Shown here: positions 14,973 through 64,000 of the stretch, one piece after another | How positions within the stretch are numbered: the stretch's first letter is position 1 | Layout of the letters: every line of letters begins with the position of its first letter | Assembly: GCA_002269645.1 (NCBI GenBank) | Contig: NIVC01000870.1 | Coordinates: forward strand, 246,330-310,329 | Origin: Macrostomum lignano | Lineage: Eukaryota | Direction: 5' to 3' | DNA length: 64,000 nucleotides | Made by a program: the position numbers and the translations under genes | The notes under the pieces: model-generated | Told to the model about the DNA's origin: nothing | Seen by the model: only the letters and a program-made list of their open reading frames with translations | Databases searched by the model: none

Positions 14973-15044
14973 TGTTTGACTCGGTGGGGTGGGTTTGAAT
15001 TTTACAAGTTTGGGGGAGTTCGTGTCCCCAGATGTAATCTGAAC

Positions 15045-15920
15045 CATAATTGGCGTCCCAATAATCTCCTCCGTAATTAGTGTTCCAATAATCCCCTCCG
15101 TAATTAGTGTTCCAATAATCCCCATCAAAATTAGTGTCCCAATAATCTCCATCATAATTAGTGTCCCAATAATCCCCATCAAAATAAGTGGCCCGATAAT
15201 CTCCATCATAATTAGTGTCCCAAAAAGTCCCCATCATAATTAGTGTCCCAATAATCCACATCATAATTGGTGTCCCAATAATCCCCATCATAATTGGTGT
15301 CCCAATAATCCCCATCATAATTGGTGTCCCAATAATCCCCATCATAATTGGTGCCCCAATAATCCCCATCATAATTAGTGTCCCAATAATCCCCATCATA
15401 ACTAGGGTCCCAATAATCCCCATCATAATTAGTGTCCCAATAATCCCCTCCATAATTGGTGTCCCAATAATCCCCTCCATAATTGGTGTCCCAATAATCC
15501 CCATCATAATTAGTGTCCCAATAATCCCCATCATAATTAGGGTCCCAATAATCCCCATCATAATTAGTGTCCCAATAATCCCCATCATAATTAGGGTCCC
15601 AATAGTCCCCATCATAATTGGTGTCCCAATAATCCCCATCATAATTAGTGTCCCAATAATCCCCATCATAATTAGTGTCCCAATAATCCCCATCATAATT
15701 AGGGTCCCAATAATCCCCATCATAATTGGTGTCCCAATAATCTCCATCATAATTAGGGTCCCAATAGTCCCCATCATAATTGGTGTCCCAATAATCCCCA
15801 TCATAATTAGTGTCCCAATAATCCCCATCATAATTAGTGTCCCAATAATCCCCATCATAATTAGTGTCCCAATAATCCCCATCATAATTGGTGTCCCAAT
15901 AATCCCCATCATAGTTGGTG
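15045..15920 (+). repeat. 27-bp minisatellite GTGTCCCAATAATCCCCATCATAATT(A/G)
   Basis: About 32 units directly downstream of the UBM gene. Confidence 0.95.
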
Positions 15921-16842
15921 TAATCCACCTTCAAGAACGTCTCTCTTAACTAAATAACTCAACCTCAAGTTACCTGTCAACCTGTCAATTATAGGTTTAA
16001 AATTGTTTGTTAGTTTAAAAAACGTGAATCAAATTGGATAAATTCCATCACAGCATCAGCAACTATACTTACTTTATTTAATTGCCCGTAACGAATCGCT
16101 GTTTTTAGCTGCTTTTTTACTTTTACTTCTTTTGCCAATTAATTTTAACTGGGCATTGTGATTTTTCAACACGTTGTTTAATACGCGTCAAAATTGGAAA
16201 ACTACTAACTAAGTAGTTAATCTGTGCCCAGTTAAATTAATTCGATATATATTTGTGTAAATGTGCACCCCGACCAGGCCAGGGCTTAAGGCAGCCTACC
16301 GTAGCTCATAAATAATTCATTTTCAAAGTACAAATGTTGATACTTCATATTGGTTGCTTGGGTTTCCTCGACGGGTTCGATTGAGTGATTGAATTATCAT
16401 TATTTATGATTTATTGCTGTGTGCCATAGTTGCAGGTCATATATGTCTGTTTAATTTGCGTGTGTTACATGCACTGTTGTACATAAACTGAGTTTGTTTC
16501 TTCATTTTTAGGTTAATTGATTGATTGATTTGTGTCACTTTTTTAGCTATCTGTTTTCTCGTCCATCTCATTTTCTGTAACTGCGCGCTGCACTGTCTGA
16601 TAATAATATAATTCAGCTTTATAAACACTTCGGCACTACTATGAGTAATTGGAGTCGCATCCAATCTTTCTGAAGTCTTTTATTATCATTTCTTTAAGTT
16701 GCTGCCGCTGCTGCCAAACTGCCGTAAGGAATGCGGCAGGTATATGTTATACCTGCTGTCAATATCCACAGCATACCGCAGGTTCGATGTATAATAACAG
16801 CTTCAGGTAGGCTTGTGTCTTCAGGTTTTTGTATTTGCACTG

Positions 16843-16970
16843 TCTGCCTGCCTGTCTGTCTGTCTGTCTCTATCTGTTTGTCTGTCTGTCTGTCTGTGTG
16901 TCTGTCTCTCTGTGTGTCTGTCTGTCTCTCTGTTTGTCTGTCTGTCTGTCTGTGTGTCTGTCTCTCTGTG

Positions 16971-17009
<39 letters not shown>

Positions 17010-17026
17010 GTGTCTGTCTCTCTGTG

Positions 17027-17064
<38 letters not shown>

Positions 17065-17123
17065 CCTGTCTGTCTGTCTGCCTGTCTGTCTGCCTGTCTG
17101 TCTGCCTGTCTGTCTGTCTGTCT
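16843..17123 (+). repeat. (CTGT)n/(GT)n compound microsatellite
   Basis: Seen directly. Confidence 0.95.
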
Positions 17124-17789
17124 TCAGGCGAAATAAGTCACAGAGCGAGCAAAAGAGAGCAGCGTTTTAAAAAGAACAGACATTAGAAAAAAACAGATGG
17201 CTTTCGGTTTGAATTCACAAAAAGTTTTTATTTGGGGTCTTACGCATGCAAAAATTTCGTACTTATGCAAGAAATATTAAAAAGCTGAACAGCACCTGCC
17301 ATGCTGTGTGCGAGTACATCGGTAAGGTCGGTACCGAAGATAAATAATAAAGACATGCAACGAGCTGACAGAAAATCAATGCAATTTGAAATGCAAAGCA
17401 GAAAAAGGCTTTAAAGAAATTGAAAAAATGAGAGGCTACAAGCTGGTGGTAAGATGCCGAGCAACAAAAGAAGACCAGAAAAAAATGAAAAAAAAAAACT
17501 CTTGAAAACCCCAATTTCAACGCTTGGGACCTGATGCTCTTCCGCGCCTTGAACGATATCTATAATGATCTTTGAAAAAGTCCTGGTTAATCCGTTGAAT
17601 GCATCTTGGTGCAAGACTCATGGGATTCTCTCTAAACTGTTTAATGAACTATAATAAACTCTCACAACTTTCAAACAAACAGTTTCATAGTCCTCCAATA
17701 AACTATATACTCTTAAGCCACCCATAAACTGTTTAAACATACCTACATAAAATATTTAACCTACCTCTAAAAAACTATTGAACCAACCT

Positions 17790-18065
17790 CTCATAAACTG
17801 TTTTAAACAACCTGTCATAAACTGTTTAACCAGTCTCTCATAAACTGTTTGAACAAACTCATGTTTAACCAACCTCTCATAGACTGTTTAACCAACCTCT
17901 CATAAACTGTTTAACCAACCTCTCATAAACTGTTTAACCAACCTGTCATAAACTGTTTAATCAACCTCTCATAAACAGTTTAACTAACCTGTCATAAACT
18001 GTTTAACCAACCTCTCATAAACTGTTTAACCAACCTGTCATAAACTGTTTAACCAACCTGTCATA
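17790..18065 (+). repeat. 23-bp minisatellite AACTGTTTAACCAACCT(C/G)TCATA
   Basis: About 12 units with degenerate flanking units. Confidence 0.9.
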
Positions 18066-18295
18066 AACTCTTATAAGAATCTTTAAGCATTTCCATAAAC
18101 AACGTTTTTAACAAACTCTCAAAAACTATTTATAAACCAATAAACACCCATTATAAACTTCGTAGGAAGTTCCCATAAACAATTTAGAAATCCCCAATGA
18201 ACAGTCGATAGGAAATTCCTCACAAACAGTATTTAAGAATCCTCATTGTCAACACAAACAACACAGTTGTAAAGTCGGTCCATTTCTCACAGTCC

Positions 18296-21200
18296 CTAGT
18301 TGCCAGCGCTGGGACTCCTGGCCGCCAGCGACCTTCGCTTGGTCTTCACCAGATCAGCGATGGACACGTCTAGCGACGCTTGCGAATCCCCGGCGCCCGC
18401 CGCCGCCGCCGCAGACAACCCGTCGAATCCGCCGTCGCCATCGGCGCCGACAATCGAATCTTGACTCCGACGCTTTCTCGAATTACCCACGCCGCTACAG
18501 CTACTACTGATGCTACTGTTAGTAGCAACCAGCGCTGCGTGCTCTTTATTGTCGCTAGACGAAGGAGTCGGCTGCTGCTGTTTCTTGAAGCCGATCGACC
18601 GACGCAAGCCCGGCTGTCGGACGCCGCTGCCGCCGGCAATCTGACGCGTCAATGTCGGACTATCGACAAATCTGTGCCGCTGCAGCAGGGATTGGTTTCT
18701 ATTAGAAGAGGCTGGCGTGGTTGGCATGGCAACGGGGTCCAGGTCGGGCAGGCCAAGGCCCAGCTGGCCAGACAGAAACTCCCGAGCCCTGCTTATCAGA
18801 GTCGATGAAGAGTTCAAAGCGGAGCGGAACGAGCTGGGCAGGTCGGCCGGGTTCAAGGCTGACAGGTCGCTCAGATCGGTGAAGTGCAGCAGCGGCAGGC
18901 CGGGCAGCACCTCGGCGCCGGTTGAGCGGCGCTGGAGGAGAAACATTGAGTTGCTGAGCTGACAGGGCATGGGAGGCAGAGGGGAACAGAGGGAGAGACA
19001 CCCAGTGCCCAGGAAATATTTGGGTAGATTGCCGATTTTCCATAGTCTATCGGTATACTTATTCATCAGGGCTGACAACAGGGAGAGGGGGAGAGGGGAT
19101 AGGGCACAGAGACTAGAATAACTAGATTGGCCACTCAGGCATATATACTTAGCAAAACAGCTGTTTTTCTAAGAGTACTTCAGTCCTGTAGCAATGAAGA
19201 ATACATAGGCTAGTCATATTTTATAATAATAAAGGCAGCTGAAATGACATTGATAAGCTTAGAAGCCCAAGCTTGCAGGCGCGTAAACAGCTTGCTAATT
19301 GGTTCAGTCATAATGTACATTGGCCACTGAAATGTACATGGCAGATTTAGGCTGGAACAACCGAGGAAGGTAATAAAAATTGGGTGGCGGGGCGGGGGTA
19401 GAGGGTGAGAGGGGAGATGGGGAGAGGGGAGAGGGTGAGACGGCGAGGGTAAGAGGAGGGTGAGAGGAGGGTGAGGGGGGGAGGGGAGGTTGAGAGGGTG
19501 AGAGGGGAGATGGTGAGAAGGGAGAGGGTGAGAGGGCGAGGGTAAGAGGAGGGTGAGAGGGCGAGGGTAAGAGGAGGGTGAGAGGAGGGTGAGGGGGGTG
19601 AGAGGAGAGAGGGGAGAGAGGCAGTAGGAACCGCAGGCCCATCAGCAGCCCCACCTGCAGGTTGAAGGCGGCAAGCGGTCTGCCCGTGAGCGCCAGTCCC
19701 GCCAGCCCCAGACTGGCCAGGCCAGCCCAGACCCGGACACAGACGAGGCCGGCGCTGCCGCAGTCGCCGTCGCCGTCGCAACGCTCCGGATCGGCCAGCA
19801 CCGCCATCATTTGGCCGTCGTCCCACACGGCGACAAGCAGGCCGCGGAGGTCTAATTCGTTGTTGTCGATGATTGCGGCGGCGTGCTGCGCCGGCGGCAA
19901 GGGCAGGCGGAGGAAACTGCGAGGTCGGTGCCGCGTCAGGATGAGGTCGGCGCGCTGCCCGAGCTCCAGGGGTCGGATAAGGCCGCCGCGGCTGAGGTTC
20001 AGAGACATCTGCGTGTCCGGGTGATGGCAACGAATAAGAGATTTCCTGTTGGAGACTTAGCTGGGATCTGTGAGAGATAAACGACTCCCTTATAACACCA
20101 TGGCCCTATGAGCGATTCTCTTATAACACCATGGCCCTATGAGCGATTCTGTTATAACAAAATGATTCTATGAATGATTCTCTTAATAGTACAATGACCC
20201 TATGAGCGATTGCTTTATAACATCATGACCCTATGAGGGATTTTATTATAAAACCTTGACACTATGAGCGATTTCCTAGAAACACGATGACCCTACGAGC
20301 GATTCAACATACCATTATGGCTCAATGAGCGAGTTCCTCACCAACCCCCCCCCCCGACAAAATCGCACCCGATGCCCGCCGGAAGCAGCGGATCCCACAT
20401 TCGCTCCGAGCACCAGCAGGCCGCAGCCCTCGCGCAGCCAGGACTCGGCGCCCTCCTCCGGGTTCCACACAGTCAGGGTGGCCACGGCGCCTTCGTCCAA
20501 GTCGGCGTCCTCGGTGCCGATGACCAGCAGGCGAACCAGCGGCGTCACCTGACGCTGCTGGACGAGCGGCGGCAGCAGCTGCTCCCGGTGCCGAGTCAGG
20601 ACGTCTCGCTGACGCTCCGTCAGCCAGGCCTGTAGTTCATCCGCGTTGAGGGCGGAGCGCAGGGCGGCCTGAAGCTCCTCGCCGGTGCTCAGCTGAGACA
20701 CTTCATCAGGCTGGTAGAGACGGCCGCGCTGCTGCGGGGGCTTGGAGCCCAGCTGAAATTGGGATGCGGGAGGCTGGGATGTGGGAGTCTGGCCCAGCAA
20801 CTGGGGATCTGGGAGTCTGGCCCAGCAACTGGGGATCTGGGAGTCTGGCCCAGCAACTGGGGATCTGGGAGGCTGGCGGCCCAGCAACTGAGGATCTGGG
20901 GCTGGTCCAGCAACTGGGGATCTGGGAGTCTGGCCCAGCAACTGAGTATCTGGGAGGCTGGCCCAGCAACTGGGGATCTGGGAGGCTGGCGGCCCAGCAA
21001 CTGAGGATCTGGGAGGCTGGCCCAGCAACTGGGGATCTGGGAGGCTGGCCCAGCAACTGGGGATCTGGGAGTCTGGCCCAGCAACTGAGTATCTGGGAGG
21101 CTGGCCCAGCAACTGGGGATCTGGGAGGCTGGCGGCCCAGCAACTGAGGATCTGGGAGGCTGGCCCAGCAACTGGGGATCTGGGAGGCTGGCCCAGCAAC

Positions 21201-23255
21201 TGAGTATCTGGGAGGCTGGCCCAGCAACTGGGGATCTGGGAGACTGGCGGCCCAGCAACTGGGGATCTGGGAGGCTGGTCCAGCAACTGGGGATCTGGGA
21301 GACTGGCCCAGCAACTGAGTATCTGGGAGGCTGGCCCAGCAACTGGGGATCTGGGAGGCTGGCGGCCCAGCAACTGAGGATCTGGGAGGCTGGCCCAGCA
21401 ACTGGGGATCTGGGAGGCTGGCCCAGCAACTGGGGATCTGGGAGTCTGGCCCAGCAACTGAGTATCTGGGAGGCTGGCCCAGCAACTGGGGATCTGGGAG
21501 GCTGGCGGCCCAGCAACTGAGGATCTGGGAGGCTGGCCCAGCAACTGGGGATCTGGGAGGCTGGCCCAGCAACTGAGTATCTGGGAGGCTGGCCCAGCAA
21601 CTGGGGATCTGGGAGACTGGCGGCCCAGCAACTGGGGATCTGGGAGGCTGGTCCAGCAACTGGGGATCTGGGAGACTGGCGGCCCAGCAACTGGGGATCT
21701 GGGAGGCTGGCGGCCCAGCAACTGAGGATCTGGGAGGCTGGTCCAGCAACTGGGGATCTGGGAGTCTGGTCCAGCAACTGGGGATCTGGGAGTCTGGTCC
21801 AGCAACTGGGGATCTGGGAGACTGGCGGCCCAGCAACTGGGGATCTGGGAGGCTGGCGGCCCAACAACTGGAAGCAGCCACCAACCTGGTCCTCCACAGC
21901 TTCCTCCATTCGCCGGCGGGCCTCAGCCTCGAACTCCCTGGCCCGTCGGTCCTCGGCTCGAGCCCCGCGGAACACCCTGGCGTCGCTGCCAGGGCTGCGC
22001 TCCATGAACTGCCGGGGGTACCGCCGGCTGACGAACAGGTGCAGAGCGCCAGCCTTGCCGCCGTCGGGCCGCAGTGAGCTGAGCGACACCGGCATCGGCG
22101 AGGCGTCGGCGAAGCCCAGCCGGACTCGTCGGTTGGCAACGCAGCGTCGGGTGCTGTTGCCATGGAGACGGAGAGCGGCGCTGGCCGGCGCTTCCAGCGG
22201 CTGGCAGGCCTCAGAGCAGCCAATCAGTTCAGCCTGGCAGGTGAGCAGCCGGGTGCCCGGTTTGATGAGGCCGGCGGAGGCTGCGCGGCACAGCAGGGGA
22301 TCCAGCTGTGCGCCGATGCAGTACCAGCCGTCCGTGAGGGTCACCTAAATCGGGAAACTAATTAATGCGTCAAATGAGCACACGCTGCTTATAAACTACT
22401 GACCAACAGTAGCAAGTGGTAAATAGTATAGGCAGAGAAAAATGCTGGCGAGACAATTGTCAGACGGCCAGACACAGACAGGTAGAGGGGAGACACAGAC
22501 AGGTAGAGGGGAGACACAGACAGGTAGAGGGGAGACACAGACAGGTAGAGGAGAGACACAGACAGGTAGAGTGGCCACACAGACAGGTAGAGGGGAGGCA
22601 CAGACCGGTAGAGGGGAGACACAGACAGGTAGAGGGGAGACACAGACAGGTAGAGGGGAGACACAGACCGGTAGAGGGGAGACACAGACAGGTAGAGTGG
22701 CGACACAGACAGGTAGAGGGGAGACACAGACAGGTAGAGGAGAGACACAGACAGGTAGAGTGGCCACACAGACAGGTAGAGGGGAGGCACAGACCGGTAG
22801 AGGGGAGACACAGACAGGTAGAGTGGCGACACAGACAGGTAGAGGGGAGACACAGACAGGTAGAGGAGAGACACAGACAGGTAGAGGGGAGATACAGACA
22901 GGTAGAGGGGAGACACAGACAGGTAGAGGGGAGACACAGACAGGTAGAGGGGAGACACAGACAGGTAGAGGGGAGACACAGACAGGTAGAGTGGCGACAC
23001 AGACAGGTAAAATGGAGGGGAGGATACACACAGTCTGACAGGGCAATGGCAGCAAGGATTGAATAGAAGCCGGGAGTTTCCTAATAAAATGCAAAGCCAG
23101 CAAAGTGAACCTTGAGCTGCTGCTGCTGCTGTTGCACCGGCTGCTTTCCAGTCTCTGTTCTGTCCGAGTTGCTGCTCCATCGCAGACTGACCACCTGCAG
23201 TGCTAGACGCGAGCTGGGCGGAGAGTCGCGCTCGAGAATTCGACGAATGCAGGGT
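18296..23255 (-). CDS. BRCA2: BRCA2 C-terminal DNA-binding domain (OB1, Tower, OB2, OB3, C-terminal tail), copy A; 5' exons not found
   Basis: Five exons splice in frame with GT-AG: 23255-23111 (PCIRRILERDSPPSSRLALQVV), 22344-21886 (VTLTDGWY...ELIGCSEACQPLE...HGNSTRR...RRYPRQFMER), 20752-20342 (RQVTPLVRLLV...LTVWNP...LREG), 20008-19655 (NELDLRGLLVAV...VRVWAGL...AAFNLQ) and 18931-18296 (LPLLHFTDLS...stop). Motifs match BRCA2 OB folds. No helical domain or BRC repeats found in the window. Confidence 0.9.
19400..19620 (-). repeat. Purine-rich (GAGGGTGAGAG-type) repeat, pyrimidine-rich on the BRCA2 sense strand, intronic
   Basis: Seen directly, inside intron 18932-19654. Confidence 0.85.
20090..20305. 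repeat. Degenerate 31-bp minisatellite (CCATGACCCTATGAGCGATT...) in a BRCA2 intron
   Basis: About 7 degenerate units; expanded in copy B at 57735-58262. Confidence 0.85.
20765..21870 (-). repeat. 28/31-bp CCCAGATCCCCAGTTGCTGGG minisatellite filling a BRCA2 intron (reverse orientation)
   Basis: Same family as the BIR arrays, read on the minus strand, between exon boundaries 21886 and 20752. Confidence 0.95.
22480..23010 (-). repeat. 21-bp minisatellite GAGACACAGACAGGTAGAGGG in a BRCA2 intron
   Basis: About 25 units. Confidence 0.95.
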
Positions 23256-23409
23256 CTGGTTGATGGAGGAATAAGCAGTAATATCTTGGTTCATTTTGTT
23301 GAGCCGAAATCGAATTTTTATCTTGTTCGAGCAAGACTCTGTGCTAATTTGTCCCTAAGTACGCATTGTTCGCTAATAACATTTTCAGCTTTCAGACAAT
23401 TATAAAGCA

Positions 23410-23726
23410 CAATAATAAAACTATAATTGATTACACCTGCCCTAAATGGGCAGATGTGCAACCAACAGCTCAGCCTCAGATATTGCGCGGCGCATCTGAA
23501 GGCTGCGTACGGCTGTTCAGTCCAAGGACCTGGAGGGGGGGGGGTCGCCACACACAGCCTCAATTACCCCAGCTAATGCTGGCACCCATTTTACAGCTGG
23601 GTGAACTGAAGAAACGCAGAGTTTAGTGTCTTGCTAAAGGACACAAATCGTTCCGGTGAGATCAGGAATCGAACCCCCGACCTTCAAGTCGTGAGTCCGA
23701 CGCTCCAACCACTGGCTACAGAGTGC
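23410..23726 (-). mobile_element. tRNA-derived CORE-type SINE, copy A
   Basis: Minus strand: A-box-like TAGCCAGTGG and B-box GGTTCGATTCC, then TGTGTCCTTTAGCAAGACACTAAAC...CAGCTGTAAAATGGG resembling the CORE domain, and an AT-rich tail. Confidence 0.75.
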
Positions 23727-24364
23727 AAGTAATATACAATAAATATATGCCACAGGAGACAAAGTGCAACAGAGGGTCAGTACATTGTACGTAGAAGTGT
23801 GTACGCGAGAGTGTGTTGCATCACCTTGGCAACAAAACTGAGTCTGTAAGATAGAATAGACCCCCTCGTACACACGCAGGAGCATTTTTATTGTTCTACC
23901 ATTTTGCGTCTTATAAGACAAACTCCTCAGCGCAAAATGGTAGCAGAAGAAACACAGTAGACAGCCACATCTTTGCACACGCAGCAAATCTCTGCAGAGT
24001 AGAATGAAAATATTTGAGAACAGATGCATCCAAAGTACGCAACGCGCACCGCCTTTTAACAGCTTTCATGTCTCCAGCGCACAGAGCACAGAGCTATTCG
24101 AATCTAACGGGGGTGTCGAGGAGCATAAGAGACGGACTAACAATAGAGCTCAGAGCTTTCCAGAGCTACTCAACAAGGAGGGCTGGGCTGCAAGTGCGCT
24201 TGAGCAGAAGAGCAAGAGAAAGAGATAAAAATTCTTAAATCTTCATGCTTTTTCACCTGCTAACGAAGATAGAAGTTTAGAGTAAAGACTAAAGCCCAAT
24301 ATCTGAGTAGTTGAAATCTGAGCTTAACAGAAGCTGACAGAAAACCTGCAGCTCACAGCTGAGG

Positions 24365-27300
24365 ATGCCAGAAGTTCGTCGAATGACCTTGGCCGCTCGG
24401 CCGAAAAATCAAGTGGTTGTGAGTTACTAACTGTCTAACTGTTGGATACTTTACTAAAATGCTGCATTTTAACATTGGTTAATGACATCCAAAATTTCAG
24501 TTCGGCGTGGTAGACAACACGCCCAAGCTGCAGTTGGACATGACCGACGAGAGGAGCGTAGAGAACCTATCCAGAGTGTGCCACTTTCTCATGCGAGAGG
24601 GCAAGGCGTGCTTGAGAAGCCTATTCGATTCCAAGCATCCAACGGACGAGCTAACGGAACACTTGGCCTCGCCGGACATTCACCGGACGCTGAGGCGACT
24701 TAAGATCAAAGACATGCTAACCGAAGACGACTGGCAGACGCTCTACCCGAAGGAGAAATCTTCCGTGTCCGCTGACAACTACGACCTGCGCCTGCTGCTC
24801 CTGTTAGTAAAATACACCTGCGATGTGACGAAGCCGCAGCCAAACGGCTGGATGGGAGATCCGGAACCTCGCGATGACAGCCAGGGCGCAGCGCTGCAAC
24901 GCCTACTGGGCATTCAACGCGAGCTCGCCTCGCTGCAGACCTTAAAGGCGAGCGCGGCTAACAGACTGTTTAGCCGCATTGCCGAGCAGCTCCAACGACT
25001 GGGACACTCGGGTGCAGCAGACTGCATGAACGCATACAAGCAGGACACTAGCATGGACGAGACTGAATCGCGCTTCATTCTGGACGAATTCCTCGTCTGG
25101 TACCGCCAAGAGGTCAGCCAGTTGAAGAGAGAAATCGAAAACCAAGAACGAAAGAAGAAGCGCGAGGAGATTCCTATTCTGCAGAAACGGCTCAAGACGC
25201 GCGATTTGGACACGTCGGAAATTAAAAAACGCCAGTCGGTTGTTGGAAAGGCGACGATGGACATGAGCGACAAGTCGCGCTGTCAGAGATGGGCTCATAT
25301 CAAAACTGGCATGGTATTAGCGGAGCGCCTCATTCTCGACAAGTACTACGAACAGCTGCTCAACGATGTAAAAGCGGACACAGTGGTTGAGCATCTGATG
25401 AACAAGGAGATTATTACCCAAGACGAGAGCACGGAAATATTTTCTACTCTGCGCAACAACGAGCAGATGTCGACACTGATCGACTTTCTAGTGCCAAAAT
25501 CTGGCAATGTGTTGGATGAGTTCGTTGAATCGCTGAAACCCAAGAACGAACAGGTGTACCAGCAGATGCACCAGGACTACCAGGCCGCTAAGGCCGACAT
25601 CCTTGCTAATAAACCACGTAAGTATTTATAATAATTAGTAAATCCTCTTCTAAGAGTTGATCACAGGATTTTTCTGTTTCTTCTGTTTCTTCAGAGGGTC
25701 TGCCTTACTGTAACAACATTCTTCGAGAGCGGTACTCCACCGCGTACGCCAAATGGAATCCGATTCCCTGGTACACTAAAGTTGAAACAGACATTGCCGA
25801 ATTCTACTGCCAACAGCAGCTGCTCAATTTGAATGGGTAAGTAGCAGGAAAACAGATCAAATCATTAAGCCAGACATAATTTTCAACTAAGCCACACATA
25901 ATTTTCAACTTTGATTTCTCAATTTAAAATTGCAGAAAGTCAGTCAACGCCTTCCAAGTTTTTGATTATAAGGAAGGCGAAAAAGACCCGCATACAGTAG
26001 TCATTGAGGGTGACCCCGGAACAGGGAAGAGTACGCTGGCTAAGTATATGGCCTACAAATGGTCTTTGGACGAAAACGTATTCAGACGGCCTTTCCAACT
26101 GCTAATCTTGCTTGATCTTAAAGTGACAGCGCCCACAGTGAAAGTGATGATGATGGAACAGCTTTTCGGAGGCGACTGCAAGCTGGCCGAACGCGAAATT
26201 TGGGAGGTGATGAACATGCACCAGGCGAGCACACTGCTCATCATAGATGGCTACGAAGACAATCTAAATGATGAGATGAAGAGTTTGCTATTTGAGAACA
26301 TCATGCCGGAACTGCACATTCTGGTATTTAGTCAGACTAACTTTACAGTCAGACTGATGCACCGCTACCAGCGAAAGGTAATTCTGACCGGATTCGCCAA
26401 ATCCCAGGCAGAGGAGTACGTTCAGAAGTACGTCAAACTAGCTAAGAAGCCGTGGGAACACTTTTCCTCGTTTCTAAACAAGCTAGTAGTGGCAAAAAAA
26501 TCAACTGAGCTTCAAAAGCTGCTGGATGCAGCGAAAAAGTCGCAGGAGCCGCAGAGGCGACGCGGGTCGTCAGAATCGGCGACATCTGTGACCTCGACAA
26601 AGCCCAGAGACGAGCGACCTTTGGAGAGGGAAAACACGGACAAAGTCAGCACAAAACTAAGCCGCAGCTCTAGCAAGGGTCAAGGAAACGATCAGCAGCA
26701 ACAACAGGATTCAAACGGTGAAAATTCAAATCAAAGCAAAATAGCGTCCCTGCGACATTACTCACAGGTGCCTTTGTACTGTTCGTTCTTCTGCCTGCTG
26801 ACCGACATGCGCATGAGTATCGATCTGAACTCTCCGACAACAATTGTGGAACAGTTTGTCTCCTGCATCAAGTTGAAGCTGATCGAACGCGAAAAGGAGA
26901 GTCGCTTCGAAGCGAATCGCGCCTACGCAATGCTGTCCGAACGCGCTATGGACACCATAAAGAAAGGCAGCGCAACTTTCATTTTGGCCAAGGAGGACCA
27001 CATGATGACTAAGTTCGGCCTGATTCAACTGGCTACAAACCTCACCGCAGAGGATAACCAGCGCTACATGTTTGGCAATCGTCTTATTCAAGAGTATCTC
27101 GCCGCGAAAAATCTAGACACTAGTGGAACAGATGAAGCTAGCCGCTTCTTCCAGAACATGAGTATGACTCCGATCTCCTACAATGTTGTTGTGTTCTACT
27201 GCAGCATCCGCAAGTCGGACAACGACACGCCGGCCACCCGGGAACTGTTTGCAAAGATACTGCAGTATAACAAACGGCGAGGCAAAGCGAGTCGCATGAA

Positions 27301-28474
27301 AATGCCAGCGGCTACGTCGCCAGAAGACAGTCAACTGGTCGAGGGCAAGATCATGGACTACCAGCTCAGTCTGGAATGCGTGGCGGTCATGGACATGGCC
27401 CGCAGAGATCTTGGCAAGAAAATTGTTGAATCGCTGCCAGAGCGATTCACCGTGAAGCACGAGGGCATCATTCCGAGATTGTCGCTTACAGGCCTGTCCA
27501 AGATGATCAAGTTTAACCACACGACCATCCAAGAGGTGGACTTGCGCCTAGATCTGCTAGCCAAAGAGACGCTTGAGGCATACAAAAGTCTGGCTACCGC
27601 AATGAAAACGAACGTTCACATCAAGACGCTCCGCATCTACTGGACAGAGAAGGATCTAATGGCAGACTTCCTTCAAACCGTGTGCTGTCCGGAGCCAGAG
27701 GACCCCGCCAATTCTACAGGCCAGATGGAAATCAGGCGTAAGAAGCCCGATCAGACCGGCTTTCATCTGAAGAATCTTGAGTGCATCGACGAGTCAGGAA
27801 AGAAGCTGGACCAGTTGTCGCCAAAAATGCTAAACAACATGCGCGAAGCCTGCTCGAACATGACTAAACTAGAAACGTTCGGATTTCAAAATTGTCACCA
27901 CATGTCGCTGGTTGGAAGCATAATAAAAAATTTGCCAACTAAATTTGCGGACAACCTGCGCATTCTAGACTTTTCTGGCTGCCAGATGAGCATAGTGGCA
28001 TCGCAGGATCTCAACGGAAAGCTGATGGAGAGCAAGAGTCTAGAAGGCCTGATCTTGGCTAACCTCAAGATTGATGCGATGGCCTTTAACACTTTCATCG
28101 CCGCATTCTCTAGCAATCGGACCATTGTCCTGCTGGATTTGAGCGGAATCCGCCTGGACAATGTCTGCTTCTTCTCTCTATCCGAAGCGCTGAAAATTAA
28201 TAACAAGCTTGAGAAGCTATTCTTACGCCAGGTGCCAATGGACACGAGAGCTTGCAAAGAGGTGGCTAGAATTCTAATGATTAATAAGATGCTGAAACTT
28301 CTCACGGTCACGCAGGAGGTCGTCAGCGAGGAGGGTCGCCGGGTTCTGGGCGAGGAGAGCCAGACGGAGACGCGCAAGAATCGGGCGGTCGTGGACGGCA
28401 TCGGGGTGGAGTATCGGCAGAGACCGACGAACGAGAGGGCCAATACTAAGAGAAACCCGCTGTCAGTCAAGTGA
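24365..28474 (+). CDS. NLR: DZIP3-type HEPN, coiled region, CARD-like death fold, NACHT, RI-like LRRs; copy A, about 1283 aa, 4 exons
   Basis: Exons 24365-24418, 24501-25617, 25695-25836 and 25936-28474 splice in frame (GTGAGT and GTAAGT donors). HEPN_DZIP3-like W..LYP...YDLRLL...C...P.PNGW..DP...D.S. CARD-like LDKYYEQLLNDVKADTVVEHLMNKEII. Walker A GDPGTGKS and Walker B LLIIDGYED. LxxLxL repeats (LRILDFSGCQM, IVLLDLSGIRL, LEKLFLRQV). Confidence 0.88.
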
Positions 28475-28592
28475 GGAAACCATGGCCGATGATGAAGACG
28501 CATCCTAACTATTATTATCAAATAACAGTGAATTTCAATAACTTTTTAAAAGTTGTGAATAGTTTTTGTTTAGCACTGCCCTCCTTCGTTAA

Positions 28593-29288
28593 TACGTCAT
28601 AGACTTACGACTGCGCAGTCTCGTTGTCATTGACCCGAAGGTCAGGCAGAGCGACGAGCTGACTAAGAAATTCGTTATCGCTGTCAAGTAAGCTAAAGTT
28701 CTGTTGAAACAGTAAACTTGCTCCATTTCGACATGAAGGTCCAAAAGTTTGCGAAACACCCACATTGCTACTTACCCCTAAACACCCACCTAATCTGCAC
28801 GCAGCCAACTGCAACATCTTACTGGCTGGCCGACCCTGGACAAGCCTGCACGCATGCCAGGGCACTTCGTTCAGGAGGACAGCTACAGCTGTGGCATCCT
28901 GGTGTGCCTCTTTGCGGAGAGCGTCATTTATACGAAGCACACCGTCCTGCCAGAAGTCGTTCACAACCTCCCTTACCAGAGACTGCGCATCTGGAATACC
29001 TTGGTGAAGGCCGCCATCGGCTCGAGTGGCCTGTGCTTCACCTGTGGCGAGGAGGAAGTTTTTTCGACTCGGCGGCACAGGAAGCCGGATGAATGGGTAA
29101 GAAACATTTGCACACAGCAGCAGTACACGTGTCAAAATTATCTTCCCCATGCCCCTTTATCTTCATCACAGATTGCCTGTGATTCCTGTGAAGCCTGGCA
29201 TCACCAGTTCTGCGTTGGAATCGCAAAGCTAGCACCGTCAAGGGTGTGGCACTGCCCCACTTGCCGGCTCGGAAGGCAGACAGACTGA
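28593..29288 (+). pseudogene. 5'-truncated Ulp1/SENP (C48) protease C-terminus plus PHD finger, probably transposon-derived
   Basis: In-frame exons about 28593-28687 (VIDLRLRSLVVIDP), 28805-29096 (QEDSYSCG catalytic Cys motif) and 29172-29288. The spliced PHD has a complete C4HC3 pattern (CFTC...CDSC...HQFC...CPTC). No start codon or catalytic-His exon found. Confidence 0.7.
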
Positions 29289-33659: not shown

Positions 33660-34090
33660 ACTATAATGGCAACATACAGCGATACTGTAACGGCCAGTGA
33701 AACTATAATGGCAACAGATAGCGATACTGTAACGGCCAGTGAAACTATAATGGCAACAGACAGCGATACTGTAACGGCCAGTGAAACTATAATGGCAACA
33801 GACAGCGATACTGTAACGGCCAGTGAAACTATAATGGCAACAGACAGCGATACTGTAACGGCCAGTGAAACTATAATGGCAACAGACAGCGATACTGTAA
33901 CGGCCAGTGAAACTATAATGGCAACAGACAGCGATACTGTAACGGCCAGTGAAACTATAATGGCAACAGACAGCGATACTGTAACGGCCAGTGAAACTAT
34001 AATGGCAACAGACAGCGATACTGTAACGGCCAGTGAAACTATAATGGCAACAGACAGCGATACTGTAACGGCCAGTGAAACTATAAAGGC
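33660..34090 (+). repeat. 42-bp tandem repeat (ATDSDTVTASETIM) x10 at the RepHel ORF start
   Basis: Seen directly. Confidence 0.95.
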
Positions 34091-37000
34091 AGCTGCAGAT
34101 AGTGTCAGTGATACCGAATTGGCCAGGGGCAGTGCTAGTGCCATTATAATAGCAGGTGAAAGTCAGAAATATACAAGCAAGACCAGGATTCAAGAAACTA
34201 ACGACGCAAATTCCGAAACAAAAGATTATCTACAGTGCAGTCGTACTGTTCCCCGAATTCGTCTTCGACGCTGTTCATCGGGTAAGTGGAACAAAGTTTC
34301 TCCACATGTGACAGATTTAGGACTCAATATAAGCTTACGTGATGATGATAAACTCAGCGTCAATGATGATAGCATTTCAAAGGATAAGCAAAAATTGACG
34401 AGTGAATGTGCAAAGGAATCGTTAAAACAAAAGCGATCTCGTAGAGCTCGTTCTTCAAAAGCTGATATGATCCTACAACGATGCAAAGAAAATAAAGAGG
34501 GTGTAAATATTAGCCATTTTACTAGATCTAAGACGTGCTATGAAGAGTCAGTAGCATCTTTAAACATTAAGAGGCAAAAAGTGGAGATTTTAAACCGGTG
34601 CGCCGATGTTTTTACCCATCAGGTAGACTTGGATGCTTCAAATGAGATAAGAGAAAAATCTATGCATGGGTGTTTAAAGCAAAACGAAGTAAAAGTAACT
34701 CACTCAAAAGTTCAGTCAAAAGTTGAAGTGAATCTACAACCATCTAACTCTAAGCTTTCAGATCAAAAGGGTTCTACTTTTCTTCCAATAACGGAGTTGC
34801 AGATAGAGCGCGTACCTGGAGATGGCAATTGCTTTTTCCACGCCATCAGCAAATCTCTGCGCGGGACACCTTTAGCTCGAAGCAGCTCCCAGCTTCGAGA
34901 GTTTCTCGGAGAAGCTACTATTCCTTATCTGAGGGCTATGCAAAATGACGGTGTTTTTGATGAAGCCGGATTTAACGACATAGTTGCTACCACATTTTTG
35001 TCTGGAGAATACGTTCCCGATGAAGTTCCTCCCATTATTAGCAACTGCTTAAATGTAGACATGTACATCTACAATGCGGACGGAACTGTGCGAATGCAAC
35101 GTACAGTTAACCAGCCTGCTGCTGTGATTCGACTTCTGTTCCACAATGAGCATTATGACGCACTGTTTCTTAAAGCAAGGGAAAGTAACGGCATGCCTTT
35201 CACTGGGCAGTCTTGCTCAAGTAAGCAGAAGCTGTCGTTAAGAGTGGATACGACTCCTACTACTACATATACAATCGGTTTTAGAGACCACAAGGAAAGT
35301 AATTCTACATCAGAAACGGCGCAGAAACCTCGAAAACCATGCACGCGTCTTCTTCCAACAACATTGGACGACAAGTCTTCTCGACGCGCATCTTCAAGAA
35401 AAATGCCACAAGCAGTTATTAATAAATCCCCGAGCTGCAATTATGGGAATACAACTAAAGACGCTCTTGAAGATCAACAAAACGAAAATTTGCCTTCACA
35501 ATTTCAAGAAATACCTCCTCCGTTTTCAAAGTTGGACTGTGAAGGAGTTCAGAATGATTGCCTTTTTGACGAACTTGCTGTTCCTAAGTGCCTACAGCAG
35601 CCATTTAATGATTCGTTTTTGAAAATGAGAAATGCATTTTTCAAGGAGAGCTTACAATTTGTTTCAAACTTGAATATGTGTACCGTTTGTAAAGAGCGTT
35701 TCCCAGGCGTTTATTTTCGAAATGAATCGGATTTAAATTGTCAGCGTTGCGTGTCTGATAGAACCGAAAAATTTCAACCGAAAAAGTTTAGCGATACAAA
35801 CAATGTTAATCCATGCGAACAACCTGAAGTGCTGCGGGACTTAACTGTTGCAGAGCAGATGTTGATTTCACCTGTACTCAGCGTACTGACAATATTTCGA
35901 CTGTTTCCTCAAGGACAGTTGAGCTCTTGTGGTCATGGTATAATGTTTCCACAAGATCAGTCTGATGTTGTTAAAATGTTACCAAGAAGAAAGCTCCCAG
36001 TAGTCCTTTTATTTGAATCGCGTGAAGAGCAGCAGCAGATGGAGCTGGAAGATGCAAGTGTAAAGAAAAATCTGAATGCATTTACAAATAAACTTAGAGT
36101 TCGCCGTAAAAATGTGCTCGGTGCGATTAAATATTTAATGCAAAATAATAAGTATTTTAAGGAATATGCCGTTATGCTTGATGAGCAAGCTATTCAAGAC
36201 TTGCCGGAAAATGGCATAATGCCCGATCTGCCTGCTTTGTATGAATCTGAAATTCCAGGTACAGATCCAGCCTCTACTGAAAAAAATGATCGTCAGAAAA
36301 TTGGTGACGAAAATGCAGAATCCAAAAATACAGAGAGCTTCAGTGCTGTACTTATGGAAGCCCCACTGCGAGAGCTGGAGGACGAAGTTCGCAAGAAGCT
36401 TTTGGAAGAAAAGCTGCAATGGCCCAAGTCAAGCAGACATCCTGTAAATGAATTTCGGCAGGAGGGCTTATTTTCCCTTGCATTTCCTCACCTATTTCCT
36501 GATGGAAGTGGAGACTATCGCACCCCAAGGCTAAGGCATATCAGCTTAGGAGAATATGGATTACACTTAATGCGGTACCACTGCTCACGATTTCGATGTG
36601 ATCCGCGGTTTCGATTTTTTTTAGAAAACATGATCATGCGATGGCGAGCTTTAGAGCTAGGCCGCGTTTATGTCAGTCAGAAGGGTTGCGCTAATTTAAA
36701 TGCAGAGCAAATGAAAGAGCGCCTCAAGGATCCAGAGGTTCTTGCCAGTGTAAGTGCTCGAGGAATGCAATTGCGGGGAACAAAATCTTATTGGGAGCTG
36801 CAGAGGCGTCGTTTAGAGGCGATGATACAGACTATTGGTTTACCTCATTTATTCGTCACTCTGTCAGCAGCGGATGTGCACTGGCCGGAATTACGCGCAT
36901 TTTGGCAAGCCGAGCAATCTGAAGTTTCTCCGAACCTGCTTCAGAAACTATTAAAAGATCCAGGATTAGCCGACACAGTTTTCTGGAATCGCTTTGAAAT

Positions 37001-53322: not shown

Positions 53323-53361
<39 letters not shown>

Positions 53362-61810: not shown

Positions 61811-64000
61811 ATGCCAGAAGTTCGTCGAATGACCTTGGCCGCTCGGCCGAAAAATCAAGTGGTTGTGAGTTACTAACTGTCTAACTGTTGGATACTTTAC
61901 TAAAATGTGCATTTTAACATTGGTTAATGACACCAAAATATTTCAGTTCGGCGTGGTAGACAACACGCCCAAGCTGCAGTTGGACATGACCGACGAGAGG
62001 AGCGTAGAGAACCTATCCAGGTGTGCCACTTTCTCATGCGAGAGGGCAAGGCGTGCTTGAGAAGCCTATTCGATTCCAAGCATCCAACGGACGAGCTAAC
62101 GGAACACTTGGCCTCGCCGGACATTCACCGGACGCTGAGGCGACTTAAGATCAAAGACATGCTAACCGAAGACGACTGGCAGACGCTCTACCCGAAGGAG
62201 AAATCTTCCGTGTCCGCTGACAACTACGACCTGCGTCTGCTGCTCCTGTTAGTAAAATACACCTGCGATGTGACGAAGCCGCAGCCAAACGGCTGGATGG
62301 GAGATCCGGAACCTCGCGATGACAGCCAGGGCGCAGCGCTGCAACGCCTACTGGGCATTCAACGCGAGCTCGCCTCGCTGCAGACCTTAAAGGCGAGCGC
62401 AGCTAACAGACTGTTTAGCCGCATTGCCGAGCAGCTCCAGCGACTGGGACACTCGGGTGCAGCAGACTGTATGAACGCATACAAGCAGGACACTAGCATG
62501 GACGAGACTGAATCGCGCTTCATTCTGGGCGAATTCCTCGTCTGGTACCGCCAAGAGGTCAGCCAGTTGAAGAGAGAAATCGAAAACCAAGAACGAAAGA
62601 AGAAGCGCGAAGAGATTCCTATTCTGCAGAAACGGCTCAAGACGCGCGATTTGGACACGTCGGAAACGAAAAAACGCCAGTCGGTGTTGGAAAGGCGACG
62701 ATGGACATGAGCGACAAGTCGCGCTGTCAGAGATGGGCTCATATCAAAACTGGCATGGTATTAGCGGAGCGCCTAATTCTCGACAAGTACTACGAACAGC
62801 TGCTCAACGATGTAAAAGCGGACACAGTGGTTGAGCATCTGATGAACAAGGAGATTATTACCCAAGACGAGAGCACGGAAATATTTTCTACTCTGCGCAA
62901 CAACGAGCAGATGTCGACGTTGATCGACTTTCTAGTGCCAAAATCTGGCAATGTGTTGGATGAGTTCGTTGAATCGCTGAAACCCAAGAACGAACAGTGT
63001 GTACCAGCAGATGCACCAGGACTACCAGGCCGCTAAGGCCGACATCCTTGCTAATAAACCACGTAAGTATTTATAATAATTAGTAAATCCTCTTCTAAGA
63101 GTTGATCACAGGATTTTTCTGTTTCTTCTGTTTCTTCAGAGGGTCTACCTTACTGAACAACATTCTTCGAGAGCGGTACTCCACCGCGTACGCCAAATGG
63201 AATCCGATTCCATGGTACACTAAAGTTGAAACAGACATTGCCGAATTCTACTGCCAACAGCAGCTGCTCAATTTGAATGGGTAAGTAGCAGGAAAACAGA
63301 TCAGATCATTAAGCAAGACATAATTTTCAACTTTGATTTCTCAATTTAAAATTGCAGAAAGTCAGTCAACGCCTTCCAAGTTTTTGATTATAAGGAAGGC
63401 GAAAAAGACCCGCATACAGTAGTTATTGAGGGTGACCCTGGAACAGGGAAGAGTACGCTGGCTAAGTATATGGCCTACAAATGGTCTTTGGACGAAAACG
63501 TATTCGGACGGCCTTTCCAACTGCTAATCTTGCTTGATCTTAAAGTAACAGCGCCACAGTGAAAGTGATGATGATGGAACAGCTTTTCGGAGGCGACTGC
63601 AAGCTGGCCGAACGCGAAATTTGGGAGGTGATGAACATGCACCAGGCGAGCACACTGCTCATCATAGATGGCTACGAAGACAATCTAAATGATGAGATGA
63701 AGAGTTGCTATTTGAGAACATCATGCCGGAACTGCACATTCTGGTATTTAGTCAGACTAACTTTACAGTCAGACTGATGCACCGCTACCAGCGAAAGGTA
63801 ATTCTGACCGGATTTCGCCAAATCCCAGGCAGAGGAGTACGTTCAGAAGTACGTCAAACTAGCTAAGAAGCCGTGGGAACACTTTTCCTCTTTCTAAACA
63901 AGCTAGTAGTGGCAAAAAATCAACTGAGCTTCAAAAGCTGCTGGATGCAGCGAAAAAGTCGCAGGAGCCGCAGAGGCGACGCGGGTCGTCAGAATCGGCG
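61811..64000 (+). CDS. NLR copy B, 5' part, with about 8 single-base indels; truncated by the window edge
   Basis: Same exon structure and motifs as 24365-26581 (Walker A at about 63430). Confidence 0.82.

What the first reader, a model, noticed from the sequence alone, without database searches (positions are those of the whole stretch)
24365..28474. NLR with a catalytically degenerate HEPN domain fused ahead of a CARD
Seen: a spliced protein of about 1283 aa with a DZIP3-type HEPN-like N-terminus, a charged coiled linker, a CARD-like domain, an intact NACHT P-loop and LRRs. At the position of the HEPN RNase motif (R-N-x3-H) it reads RLLGIQRELASL, so Asn and His are lost. Established: HEPN RNases need this motif, and HEPN_DZIP3-NACHT fusions occur in some marine invertebrates. 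Inference: a tandem HEPN+CARD effector end whose HEPN is a pseudo-nuclease, possibly an RNA-binding sensor or dimerisation module gating CARD signalling. If the host is a lineage thought to have few NLRs, this would add novelty.
Basis: partly seen in the sequence, partly recalled or inferred. Interest (0 to 1): 0.75.

Follow-up and report, generated by a model that had tools for sequence, protein, structure and literature searches.

The report
Flatworm NLR with an inactive HEPN domain
This is a real, intact immune-receptor-type gene of the flatworm Macrostomum lignano (inactive HEPN, CARD, NACHT, leucine-rich repeats), but it belongs to an uncharacterised gene family shared by molluscs, annelids, brachiopods and nemerteans, all of which also lack the HEPN catalytic histidine.

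Summary
A GT-AG spliced gene at 24365-28474 encodes 1283 aa. The annotated isoform adds a mini-exon at 28603-28633 and gives 1292 aa. Pfam finds HEPN_DZIP3 (E 4e-17), CARD (E 6e-9) and NACHT (E 6e-15), and the C-terminus carries RNase-inhibitor-type LRRs. At the HEPN catalytic columns the protein reads Q157-R158-x3-S162, so Arg, Asn and His are all replaced.

The host is the flatworm Macrostomum lignano. The gene is already deposited as hypothetical protein PAA75635.1.

The architecture is not unique. Collinear full-length relatives occur in Lingula, Tubulanus, Owenia, Capitella, Lottia, Haliotis and Mizuhopecten. All nine CARD-bearing relatives lack the catalytic His, and none of 48 canonical RN..H HEPN domains sits in a CARD protein. 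The inactive HEPN is the family's best-conserved domain.

The family's CARD-to-WHD module aligns best and collinearly with NLRC4. Published counts show one NACHT+HEPN and one NACHT+CARD gene in a planarian.

Most likely this is an NLRC4-like NLR that signals through its CARD, with the HEPN kept for a non-catalytic role. It is a new member of a known kind and of moderate interest.

The parts
24365..24418 (+). Exon 1, with the start codon; encodes MPEVRRMTLAARPKNQVV
   Evidence: GT donor at 24419; matches the N-terminus of PAA75635.1
24501..25617 (+). Exon 2, one uninterrupted exon that encodes HEPN, linker and CARD (aa 19-390)
   Evidence: AG acceptor and GT donor. It was the query of the exhaustive search.
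24549..25169 (+). HEPN_DZIP3-type all-helical domain, aa 35-241 (Pfam match aa 68-206)
   Evidence: Pfam PF18738, E 4.2e-17. AlphaFold2 pLDDT 94 and pTM 0.87. No PDB fold match.
24915..24932 (+). Degenerate catalytic site, Q157-R158-E-L-A-S162, at the columns where canonical members read R-N-x3-H
   Evidence: Alignments; motif table
25170..25316 (+). Disordered basic linker, aa 242-290. The charged helix at aa 205-241 lies just upstream, inside the HEPN span.
   Evidence: pLDDT below 50; net charge +7; only 16-17% identity among orthologs
25317..25607 (+). CARD, aa 291-387
   Evidence: Pfam PF00619, E 6.3e-9. Foldseek matches Apaf-1, caspase-9 and NLRC4 CARDs with TM 0.81-0.89 and rmsd 1.3-2.2 A.
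25695..25836 (+). Exon 3, the pre-NACHT region with the conserved Y404..P413-x-x-W416 motif
   Evidence: Splice sites; invariant columns in A1 and A4
25936..28474 (+). Exon 4: NACHT, helical and winged-helix domains, and LRRs. It runs to the TGA at 28472-28474. The annotated mRNA instead splices out at 28470.
25991..26437 (+). NACHT NTPase, aa 457-605. P-loop GDPGTGKST at 26009-26035; Walker B LLIIDGYED at 26234-26260.
   Evidence: Pfam PF05729, E 5.8e-15. The family profile matches NLRC4 at E 7e-20.
26498..26758 (+). Low-complexity insert specific to M. lignano, aa 626-712, rich in Ser, Gln, Lys and Arg
   Evidence: Absent from all seven orthologs in the full-length alignment
27803..28372 (+). 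Ribonuclease-inhibitor-type leucine-rich repeats, about aa 1061-1250
   Evidence: phmmer matches to NLRP14, NLRP5, NLRP1 and RNH1 LRRs; family profile
28603..28633 (+). Alternative terminal mini-exon of the annotated mRNA; adds LTTAQSRCH and a stop
   Evidence: The 5-exon translation equals PAA75635.1 exactly
61811..64000 (+). Second, tandem copy of the gene, in a second copy of a unit of about 37.5 kb. The window end cuts it at about aa 653.
   Evidence: It has 9 single-base indels in coding sequence, and 13 synonymous against 4 non-synonymous substitutions.

Best explanation
The locus encodes the Macrostomum lignano member (Mlig016872.g2) of an old, conserved spiralian NLR family. Its architecture is inactive DZIP3-type HEPN, flexible charged linker, CARD, NACHT, helical and winged-helix domains, then RNase-inhibitor-type LRRs.

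Shown: the gene is intact. The architecture is collinear across five phyla. The catalytic His of the HEPN is replaced, mostly by Ser, in every CARD-bearing member, and Asn and Arg are also eroded in several lineages, all three in the flatworm. The HEPN is nevertheless the best-conserved domain. The CARD has a canonical fold. The CARD-NACHT-WHD module is closest to NLRC4 among solved structures.

Inferred: the protein works like NLRC4 or Apaf-1. Release of LRR autoinhibition leads to nucleotide-dependent NACHT oligomerisation. This clusters the CARDs, which recruit a CARD-bearing caspase or adaptor. In this reading the CARD took over the output role that an active HEPN RNase presumably has in CARD-less HEPN-NACHT proteins. 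The HEPN was then kept as a non-catalytic module. Because HEPN domains act as dimers, a dimerisation or regulatory scaffold is the likeliest role.
For: Gene model and identity to PAA75635.1. Pfam domains above curated cut-offs.

Exhaustive HMMER search: 391 hits. The top full-length hits come from Lingula, Tubulanus, Owenia, Lottia, Mizuhopecten, Capitella and Haliotis, and all are HEPN_DZIP3 + CARD + NACHT. The full-length alignment is collinear.

Motif: 9 of 9 CARD-bearing proteins lack His, and 0 of 48 canonical RN..H domains lie in CARD proteins. Canonical-motif long proteins are HEPN-NACHT(-LRR), HEPN-NB-ARC-TPR or HEPN-B-box-Filamin-NHL, never with a CARD. The only invariant polar residues in the clade's HEPN are D143 and C125; no His, Arg or Asn is invariant.

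Conservation: HEPN identity is 40.7% among the non-flatworm orthologs, against 26.3% for NACHT and 33.4% for CARD.

Folds: the CARD matches Apaf-1, caspase-9 and NLRC4 CARDs at TM 0.81-0.89. The NACHT profile hits NLRC4 at E 7e-20 and NAIP at 3e-16, ahead of the NLRPs and NOD2. The full-length profile aligns in one stretch to NLRC4 residues 20-512 at E 8e-43.

Constraint within M. lignano: several near-identical intact paralogs exist, and the two copies in the window differ by 13 synonymous and 4 non-synonymous changes.

Independent published counts: one HEPN_DZIP3 gene, NACHT-linked, in many spiralians including the planarian Schmidtea mediterranea (PMC9646362 Table S18).
Against: No functional data exist for any family member. 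No paper mentions the gene IDs.

The HEPN label rests on the Pfam sequence profile alone. A very confident model (pLDDT 94) found no PDB fold match, with every hit at E>1, and the family profile hit no PDB sequence.

The M. lignano sequence on its own does not single out NLRC4; that link appears only at the family-profile level.

The link between CARD presence and motif loss is probably one evolutionary event, not nine independent ones.

No CARD-bearing partner in M. lignano was looked for or found. No expression data could be consulted. The dimerisation or regulatory role of the HEPN is pure inference, because no multimer model could be run.
Confidence: 0.62

Rival explanations
1. The degenerate HEPN is a ligand sensor that binds RNA or nucleotides, for example viral RNA, and so gates CARD signalling.
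For: The domain is strongly conserved despite losing catalysis. The nearly invariant Arg of the 'ADIxR' motif, R152, is retained. From general knowledge, DZIP3/hRUL138 is an RNA-binding ubiquitin ligase, and some inactive HEPN domains bind nucleotides.
Against: The HEPN domain has a net charge of -1 and 29% charged residues, so it is not basic. No basic residue is invariant across the clade. The LRRs already provide a conventional sensor. No RNA-binding test is possible with these tools.
Confidence: 0.17
2. The HEPN is still an RNase and uses other residues, that is, a hidden or relocated active site.
For: The loose pattern Rx4-6H occurs at R57..H64 (RSLFDSKH) and at R278..H284.
Against: R57..H64 is the family-wide structural 'LRxxFxxxHPP' segment at the end of helix 1. 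It is also present in members that have the real RN..H site, and H64 itself is Phe in Tubulanus and Tyr in Owenia. R278..H284 lies in the unconserved disordered linker. No His, Arg or Asn is invariant in the clade.
Confidence: 0.04
3. The gene is a decaying or non-functional copy in M. lignano, and the degenerate HEPN simply reflects loss of constraint in a lineage that is losing NLRs.
For: The M. lignano HEPN is the most divergent in the family: 62.7 Pfam bits against 88-138 for the orthologs, with all three catalytic residues replaced. It carries lineage-specific low-complexity inserts. The second copy in the window has nine frame-breaking indels. Parasitic flatworms have lost all NACHT genes.
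Against: The reading frame is open for 1283 codons across four exons with intact splice sites. Several intact paralogs about 99.5% identical exist. Substitutions between the copies are 13 synonymous to 4 non-synonymous. The P-loop, the Walker B Asp and all clade-invariant HEPN core residues are kept. The His loss predates flatworms.
Confidence: 0.07
4. The architecture is a gene-prediction artefact that joins a HEPN gene to a neighbouring CARD-NLR gene.
For: None was found. It was considered because NLR clusters are often mis-merged.
Against: HEPN, linker and CARD are encoded by one uninterrupted exon, 24501-25617. The same order is seen in independently annotated proteins of seven other species.
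Confidence: 0.01

Closest known systems
NLRC4 (vertebrate CARD-NACHT-LRR inflammasome protein) and its partner NAIP
   Same: Both have CARD, then NACHT, HD1 and WHD, then RNase-inhibitor-type LRRs. The family profile aligns in one collinear stretch to NLRC4 residues 20-512 (E 8e-43) and ranks NLRC4 and NAIP first for the NACHT domain. Both read 'TTE'-like, not 'TSRP', at the sensor-1 position. RefSeq calls the scallop member 'NLRC4-like' and the Lingula member 'NLRC3-like'.
   Different: This family has an extra N-terminal HEPN_DZIP3 domain and a long linker. No NAIP-type partner is known. Identity is low, and orthology to NLRC4 was not tested by phylogeny.
HEPN_DZIP3-NACHT(-LRR) proteins expanded in bivalves and corals (PMC9646362; PMC3710099)
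   Same: They share the Pfam HEPN_DZIP3 domain at the N-terminus of a NACHT protein, often with LRRs.
   Different: Those proteins mostly keep RNx3-5H (194 of 202 in the pearl oyster), have no CARD and occur as large lineage-specific expansions. This family has lost the His, carries a CARD, and appears as about one gene per species.
'Classical NLRC' of Lingula, oyster and abalone, described in PMC11508797 (2024)
   Same: These are probably the same proteins or close relatives. They are described as CARD-NACHT-LRR and modelled in silico as binding caspase-1 through the CARD.
   Different: That paper does not mention the N-terminal HEPN domain or its inactivation (0 occurrences of 'HEPN'), and it includes no flatworm.
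Catalytically inactive HEPN domains, for example the Swt1 family
   Same: The HEPN-family domain is retained without the Rx4-6H catalytic residues. PMC3710099 lists inactive HEPN families.
   Different: The HEPN subfamily and the protein context differ. None is known inside a CARD-NACHT-LRR protein.

Membership tests
NLR (NACHT-LRR protein) | NACHT NTPase domain with a Walker A P-loop and a Walker B aspartate | tested here: met
   Pfam NACHT at 56 bits against a cut-off of 26.7. GDPGTGKST and LLIIDGYED are present, and G463, G466, G468 and D542 are invariant in the family.
NLR (NACHT-LRR protein) | C-terminal leucine-rich repeats | tested here: met
   Amino acids 1107-1244 align to NLRP14, NLRP5, NLRP1 and ribonuclease-inhibitor LRRs at E 1e-6 to 1e-8. 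The family profile gives stronger matches. No Pfam LRR model reached E<=1 for the flatworm protein itself.
Pfam HEPN_DZIP3 (PF18738) | Match to the family profile above the curated cut-off | tested here: met
   62.7 bits against a cut-off of 27, covering profile positions 3-140 of 144
HEPN superfamily, active RNase | Rx4-6H catalytic motif, here R-N-x3-5-H, at the conserved helix | tested here: not met
   The columns read Q157-R158-E-L-A-S162, where canonical members read YRNxxx(x)H.
HEPN superfamily (fold) | Structural similarity to solved HEPN domains | tested here: inconclusive
   The AlphaFold2 model has pLDDT 94.2, but every Foldseek PDB hit has E>1 and TM<0.3. The sequence profile hits no PDB chain. 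All-helical folds are hard for this method.
CARD (death-fold superfamily) | Profile match and a six-helix CARD fold | tested here: met
   Pfam CARD at 36.2 bits against a cut-off of 23.9. Foldseek gives TM 0.81-0.89 and rmsd 1.3-2.2 A to Apaf-1, caspase-9 and NLRC4 CARDs.
CARD (death-fold superfamily) | Homotypic binding to a CARD-bearing caspase or adaptor | not testable with these tools
   No M. lignano proteome search or interaction assay was available.
NLRC4-like NLR | CARD-NBD-HD1-WHD module most similar to NLRC4 | tested here: met
   Met at the family-profile level only: E 7e-20 for NACHT and E 8e-43 for one collinear stretch. The single flatworm sequence does not rank NLRC4 first. No phylogeny was done.
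NLRC4-like NLR | Activation by a NAIP-type ligand-bound partner and recruitment of caspase-1 | not tested
   There are no data. A docking claim for Lingula and oyster in PMC11508797 is in silico only.
Spiralian HEPN-CARD-NACHT-LRR family (defined here) | Collinear full-length alignment with the seven named members, plus shared loss of the catalytic His | tested here: met
   20-26% full-length identity with 48 invariant columns spread over all domains; motif table

The most novel reading that the evidence does not exclude
This family could be the ancestral, single-copy spiralian NLRC4-like inflammasome or apoptosome sensor. Its inactivated HEPN domain would have been re-used as an obligatory dimerisation, autoinhibition or RNA-sensing module. 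It may also be essentially the only NLR kept by free-living flatworms. That would make M. lignano, a transgenic and RNAi-tractable laboratory animal, a one-NLR system for working out what a pseudo-nuclease domain does in an NLR.
Probability: 0.2. Interest if true: 0.6.

Novelty: new member of a known kind. Interest (0 to 1): 0.35.

Why it matters
NLRs usually evolve as fast, lineage-specific expansions. A collinear NLR at roughly one gene per species across molluscs, annelids, brachiopods, nemerteans and flatworms is unusual.

The retained but catalytically dead HEPN is the best-conserved part of the protein. This points to an unrecognised non-enzymatic role for a nuclease-derived domain in animal innate immunity. 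It also suggests a hand-over of effector role from RNase to CARD.

Flatworms have very few NACHT genes, and M. lignano is experimentally tractable, so the function could be tested directly.

None of this is a new kind of system. HEPN-NACHT fusions, CARD-NLRs and inactive HEPNs are each known, and the protein is already in public databases as a hypothetical protein.

Tried and rejected
1. The word-index homolog searches were nearly useless here. The full-length query found only its own cluster and one weak hit. The N-terminal family alignment found one fragment and missed even its own members. The HEPN-only profile found only unnamed fragments from ENA, JGI and Logan assemblies. The survey therefore rests on the exhaustive HMMER search.

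2. I tried to place the closest unnamed relatives (P0005, P0007, P0022, P0046) taxonomically. Cluster look-ups gave no names, and the contig carrying P0007 is an anonymous metagenome contig.

3. Structural confirmation of the HEPN fold failed. Foldseek against the PDB and a profile search against PDB sequences gave nothing meaningful.

4. I first read the absence of the NACHT sensor-1 arginine (FSQT here, against 'TSRP' in many NLRs) as degeneration of the ATPase. I withdrew that reading because NLRC4 itself reads VTTTTE at that position.

5. A hidden Rx4-6H site was checked and rejected.

6. A gene-fusion artefact was rejected, because HEPN and CARD share one exon.

7. The literature searches that gave nothing were those for flatworm NLR descriptions, which found no description or statement in any paper's text, and those for the gene IDs. 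Zhu et al. 2022 on lophotrochozoan NLRs is not held in the library. The one relevant flatworm source was the count table in PMC9646362 Table S18.
Full report
**What is there**

The window is eukaryotic, with patchy GC content and many minisatellites.

Between 24365 and 28474 on the + strand, four exons join through canonical GT-AG introns into an open frame of 1283 codons. The exons are 24365-24418, 24501-25617, 25695-25836 and 25936-28474.

The product is 100% identical over its whole length to NCBI PAA75635.1. That entry is 'hypothetical protein BOX15_Mlig016872g2' of the free-living flatworm Macrostomum lignano, and UniRef names it 'CARD domain-containing protein'.

The deposited protein is 1292 aa. 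The annotated mRNA uses a donor at 28470/28471, just before the in-frame TGA, and a mini-exon at 28603-28633. That five-exon model reproduces the deposited protein exactly.

**Domains**

Pfam places three domains, each above its curated cut-off:

- HEPN_DZIP3 at aa 68-206: E 4.2e-17, 62.7 bits.
- CARD at aa 297-376: E 6.3e-9, 36.2 bits.
- NACHT at aa 457-605: E 5.8e-15, 56 bits.

The C-terminal 1107-1244 aligns to the RNase-inhibitor-type LRRs of NLRP14, NLRP5, NLRP1 and RNH1.

The P-loop (GDPGTGKST) and the Walker B stretch (LLIIDGYED) are intact.

An AlphaFold2 model of aa 1-475 shows four segments:

- a confident helical domain at 35-241, ending in a 37-residue helix that is 51% charged;
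- a disordered basic stretch at 242-290;
- a confident six-helix CARD at 291-387;
- a low-confidence tail.

The CARD superposes on the Apaf-1, caspase-9 and NLRC4 CARDs with TM 0.81-0.89 and rmsd 1.3-2.2 A.

HEPN, linker and CARD are all encoded by exon 2. The fusion therefore cannot be an annotation artefact.

**The motif**

I aligned the HEPN domains of the 150 best hits of an exhaustive HMMER search. Canonical family members read Y-R-N-x3-5-H at the catalytic columns. The flatworm protein reads I156-Q157-R158-E-L-A-S162.

So Arg, Asn and His are all replaced.

The loose pattern Rx4-6H occurs twice more in the N-terminal region. Neither occurrence is a credible active site:

- R57..H64 is the family-wide 'LRxxFxxxHPP' element. 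It is also present in members that have the real site, and H64 itself is not conserved.
- R278..H284 lies in the unconserved disordered linker.

**It is a family, not a one-off**

The exhaustive search with exon 2 gave 391 hits. The best full-length hits match across HEPN, linker and CARD. They come from seven named taxa:

- Lingula anatina (brachiopod)
- Tubulanus polymorphus (nemertean)
- Owenia fusiformis and Capitella teleta (annelids)
- Lottia gigantea and Haliotis species (gastropods)
- Mizuhopecten yessoensis (scallop)

Each is HEPN_DZIP3 + CARD + NACHT by Pfam, and some also match LRR_6. They align collinearly with the flatworm protein from the HEPN to the last LRR, with invariant columns in every domain.

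All of them lack the catalytic His:

| Species | Residues at the catalytic columns |
|---|---|
| Lingula | YRRQLVS |
| Capitella | FRKLLAS |
| Tubulanus | FRKQLVW |
| Lottia | LLQQIGS |
| Mizuhopecten | LYQQVAS |
| Owenia | IQAYLGS |

Several unnamed fragments of the same clade read FRNLLAS. This suggests an order of loss: His first, then Asn, then Arg.

Of 107 HEPN domains whose motif columns were covered, 48 are canonical RN..H, and none of those is in a CARD-bearing protein. All 9 CARD-bearing proteins lack the His.

Long canonical-motif proteins are HEPN-NACHT(-LRR), HEPN-NB-ARC-TPR or HEPN-B-box-Filamin-NHL, and none has a CARD.

The CARD-bearing proteins form one clade, so this is best read as one ancient event and not as nine independent ones.

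**Constraint**

Among the non-flatworm orthologs the inactive HEPN is the most conserved domain:

| Region | Mean identity among non-flatworm orthologs |
|---|---|
| HEPN | 40.7% |
| CARD | 33.4% |
| LRR | 31.3% |
| NACHT | 26.3% |
| Linker | 17.5% |

The invariant HEPN residues are hydrophobic or structural (F, P, L, W, C, G), plus D143. No His, Arg or Asn is invariant. This is the pattern of a pseudo-enzyme kept for its structure.

The flatworm protein is the most divergent member. Its HEPN scores 62.7 Pfam bits against 88-138 for the orthologs, and it has two lineage-specific inserts at aa 626-712 and 1022-1043.

**Relation to known NLRs**

A profile of the family's NACHT domain ranks solved structures in this order:

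| Solved protein | E-value |
|---|---|
| NLRC4 | 7e-20 |
| NAIP | 3e-16 |
| NLRP14 | 2e-14 |
| NOD2 | 1e-10 |

The full-length profile aligns in a single stretch to NLRC4 residues 20-512, from CARD through WHD, at E 8e-43.

I had first taken the lack of a 'TSRP' sensor-1 arginine as degeneration. NLRC4 reads VTTTTE at that position, so it is a shared trait.

This link to NLRC4 is seen at the family level only. The flatworm sequence on its own does not single out NLRC4, and no tree was built.

**What could not be confirmed**

The HEPN label rests on the Pfam profile alone. A very confident HEPN-only model (pLDDT 94.2, pTM 0.87) found no meaningful PDB match. The family profile hit no PDB sequence.

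**Literature**

- Anantharaman et al. 2013 (PMC3710099) list the DZIP3/hRUL138 HEPN family with a 'mostly conserved' motif and with fusions to CARD, NACHT, DEATH and LRR.
- Takeuchi et al. 2022 (PMC9646362) report that 194 of 202 pearl-oyster HEPN_DZIP3 proteins keep Rx4-6H.
- Their Table S18 gives exactly one HEPN_DZIP3 gene, NACHT-linked, in Lottia, Haliotis, Gigantopelta, Pomacea, Notospermus and Capitella.
- The same table covers two flatworms. The planarian Schmidtea mediterranea has NACHT 2, NACHT+HEPN 1, NACHT+LRR 1 and NACHT+CARD 1. Schistosoma mansoni has none.
- A 2024 survey (PMC11508797) calls the Lingula, oyster and abalone proteins 'classical NLRC' and does not mention a HEPN domain.
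- No paper mentions Mlig016872 or Mlig026612.

**Most likely mechanism**

Shown: an intact, constrained, NLRC4-like CARD-NACHT-LRR protein with an extra N-terminal HEPN-family domain that has no catalytic residues.

Inferred by analogy with NLRC4 and Apaf-1: ligand-dependent release of LRR autoinhibition leads to NACHT oligomerisation and CARD clustering. The clustered CARDs then recruit a CARD-bearing caspase or adaptor.

Also inferred: the CARD replaced the RNase as the output. The HEPN persists as a non-catalytic module, most plausibly for dimerisation or regulation, because HEPN domains act as dimers.

A role in RNA sensing is possible. It gets no support from the domain's charge, which is net -1.

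**The locus**

The window holds two tandem copies of a unit of about 37.5 kb. Roughly 8.3-26.6 kb matches 45.9-64.0 kb, and the last block is 96.6% identical.

The second gene copy (61811-64000) is cut by the window end. It carries nine single-base indels in coding sequence.

Its substitutions relative to copy 1 are 13 synonymous and 4 non-synonymous. Two of its amino-acid differences match the intact paralog Mlig026612. The indels may therefore be long-read consensus errors and not real decay.

**Verdict**

The pseudo-nuclease inference is strengthened and extended to a whole clade. The implied uniqueness is refuted.

This is a new member of a known kind, in an uncharacterised but already deposited family. 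Interest is moderate.

Noticed in passing
window 8300-26581 and 45918-64000: A tandem segmental duplication with a period of about 37.5 kb. The block 21231-26581 matches 58707-64000 at 96.6% identity; older parts are 70-93% identical. Each unit carries a copy of the NLR gene.
   Followed up: partly
window 61811-64000 (+): The second NLR copy has nine single-base indels inside coding exons. Its substitutions are 13 synonymous to 4 non-synonymous against copy 1. The annotated product is a 224-aa fragment (P0154). It is either a very recent pseudogene or carries long-read consensus errors.
   Followed up: partly
window 33666-39788 (+): An uninterrupted 2040-aa ORF encodes a Helitron Rep/helicase (Helitron_like_N 96 bits, PIF1 helicase 77 bits, DUF6570 68 bits). 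It is an apparently intact Helitron transposase lying between the two duplicated units.
   Followed up: partly
window 21850-22344 (-), with a duplicate near 59.3-59.8 kb: An exon encodes BRCA2 OB1 (75 bits) and a weak Tower domain match. It sits just upstream of the NLR gene and is divergently oriented. The same long ORF runs on into a GC-rich minisatellite.
   Followed up: partly
window 28854-29288 (+): A short ORF immediately 3' of the NLR has a PHD finger (24.7 bits). By eye it also has a Ulp1-like 'DSYSCGILVC' cysteine-protease motif, so it may be transposon-derived.
   Followed up: no
window 28471-28602: This is an alternative 3' end. The annotated mRNA splices out 132 bases that begin one base before the in-frame TGA and adds nine residues from a mini-exon. 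Retaining the intron gives the 1283-aa form.
   Followed up: yes
window 9.6-11.8, 12.5-14.0, 15.0-15.9, 20.3-23.3, 30.1-30.9, 40.1-41.4, 41.7-42.6, 47.3-50.9, 55.0-55.9 and 57.7-59.3 kb: Many long minisatellite arrays, some GC-rich and present in both orientations. They create long spurious ORFs on both strands. Units of about 97 and 176 nt occur at 40-42.6 kb.
   Followed up: no
aa 626-712 (window 26498-26758) and aa 1022-1043: Low-complexity inserts found only in the M. lignano protein, not in its seven orthologs. The first is rich in Ser, Gln, Lys and Arg and sits between the NACHT and the helical domains.
   Followed up: no
P0019 (Haliotis ortholog): The abalone member reads GAPGIGQTT in the P-loop, with the Walker A lysine replaced by Gln. 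Nucleotide binding may be altered in that lineage.
   Followed up: no
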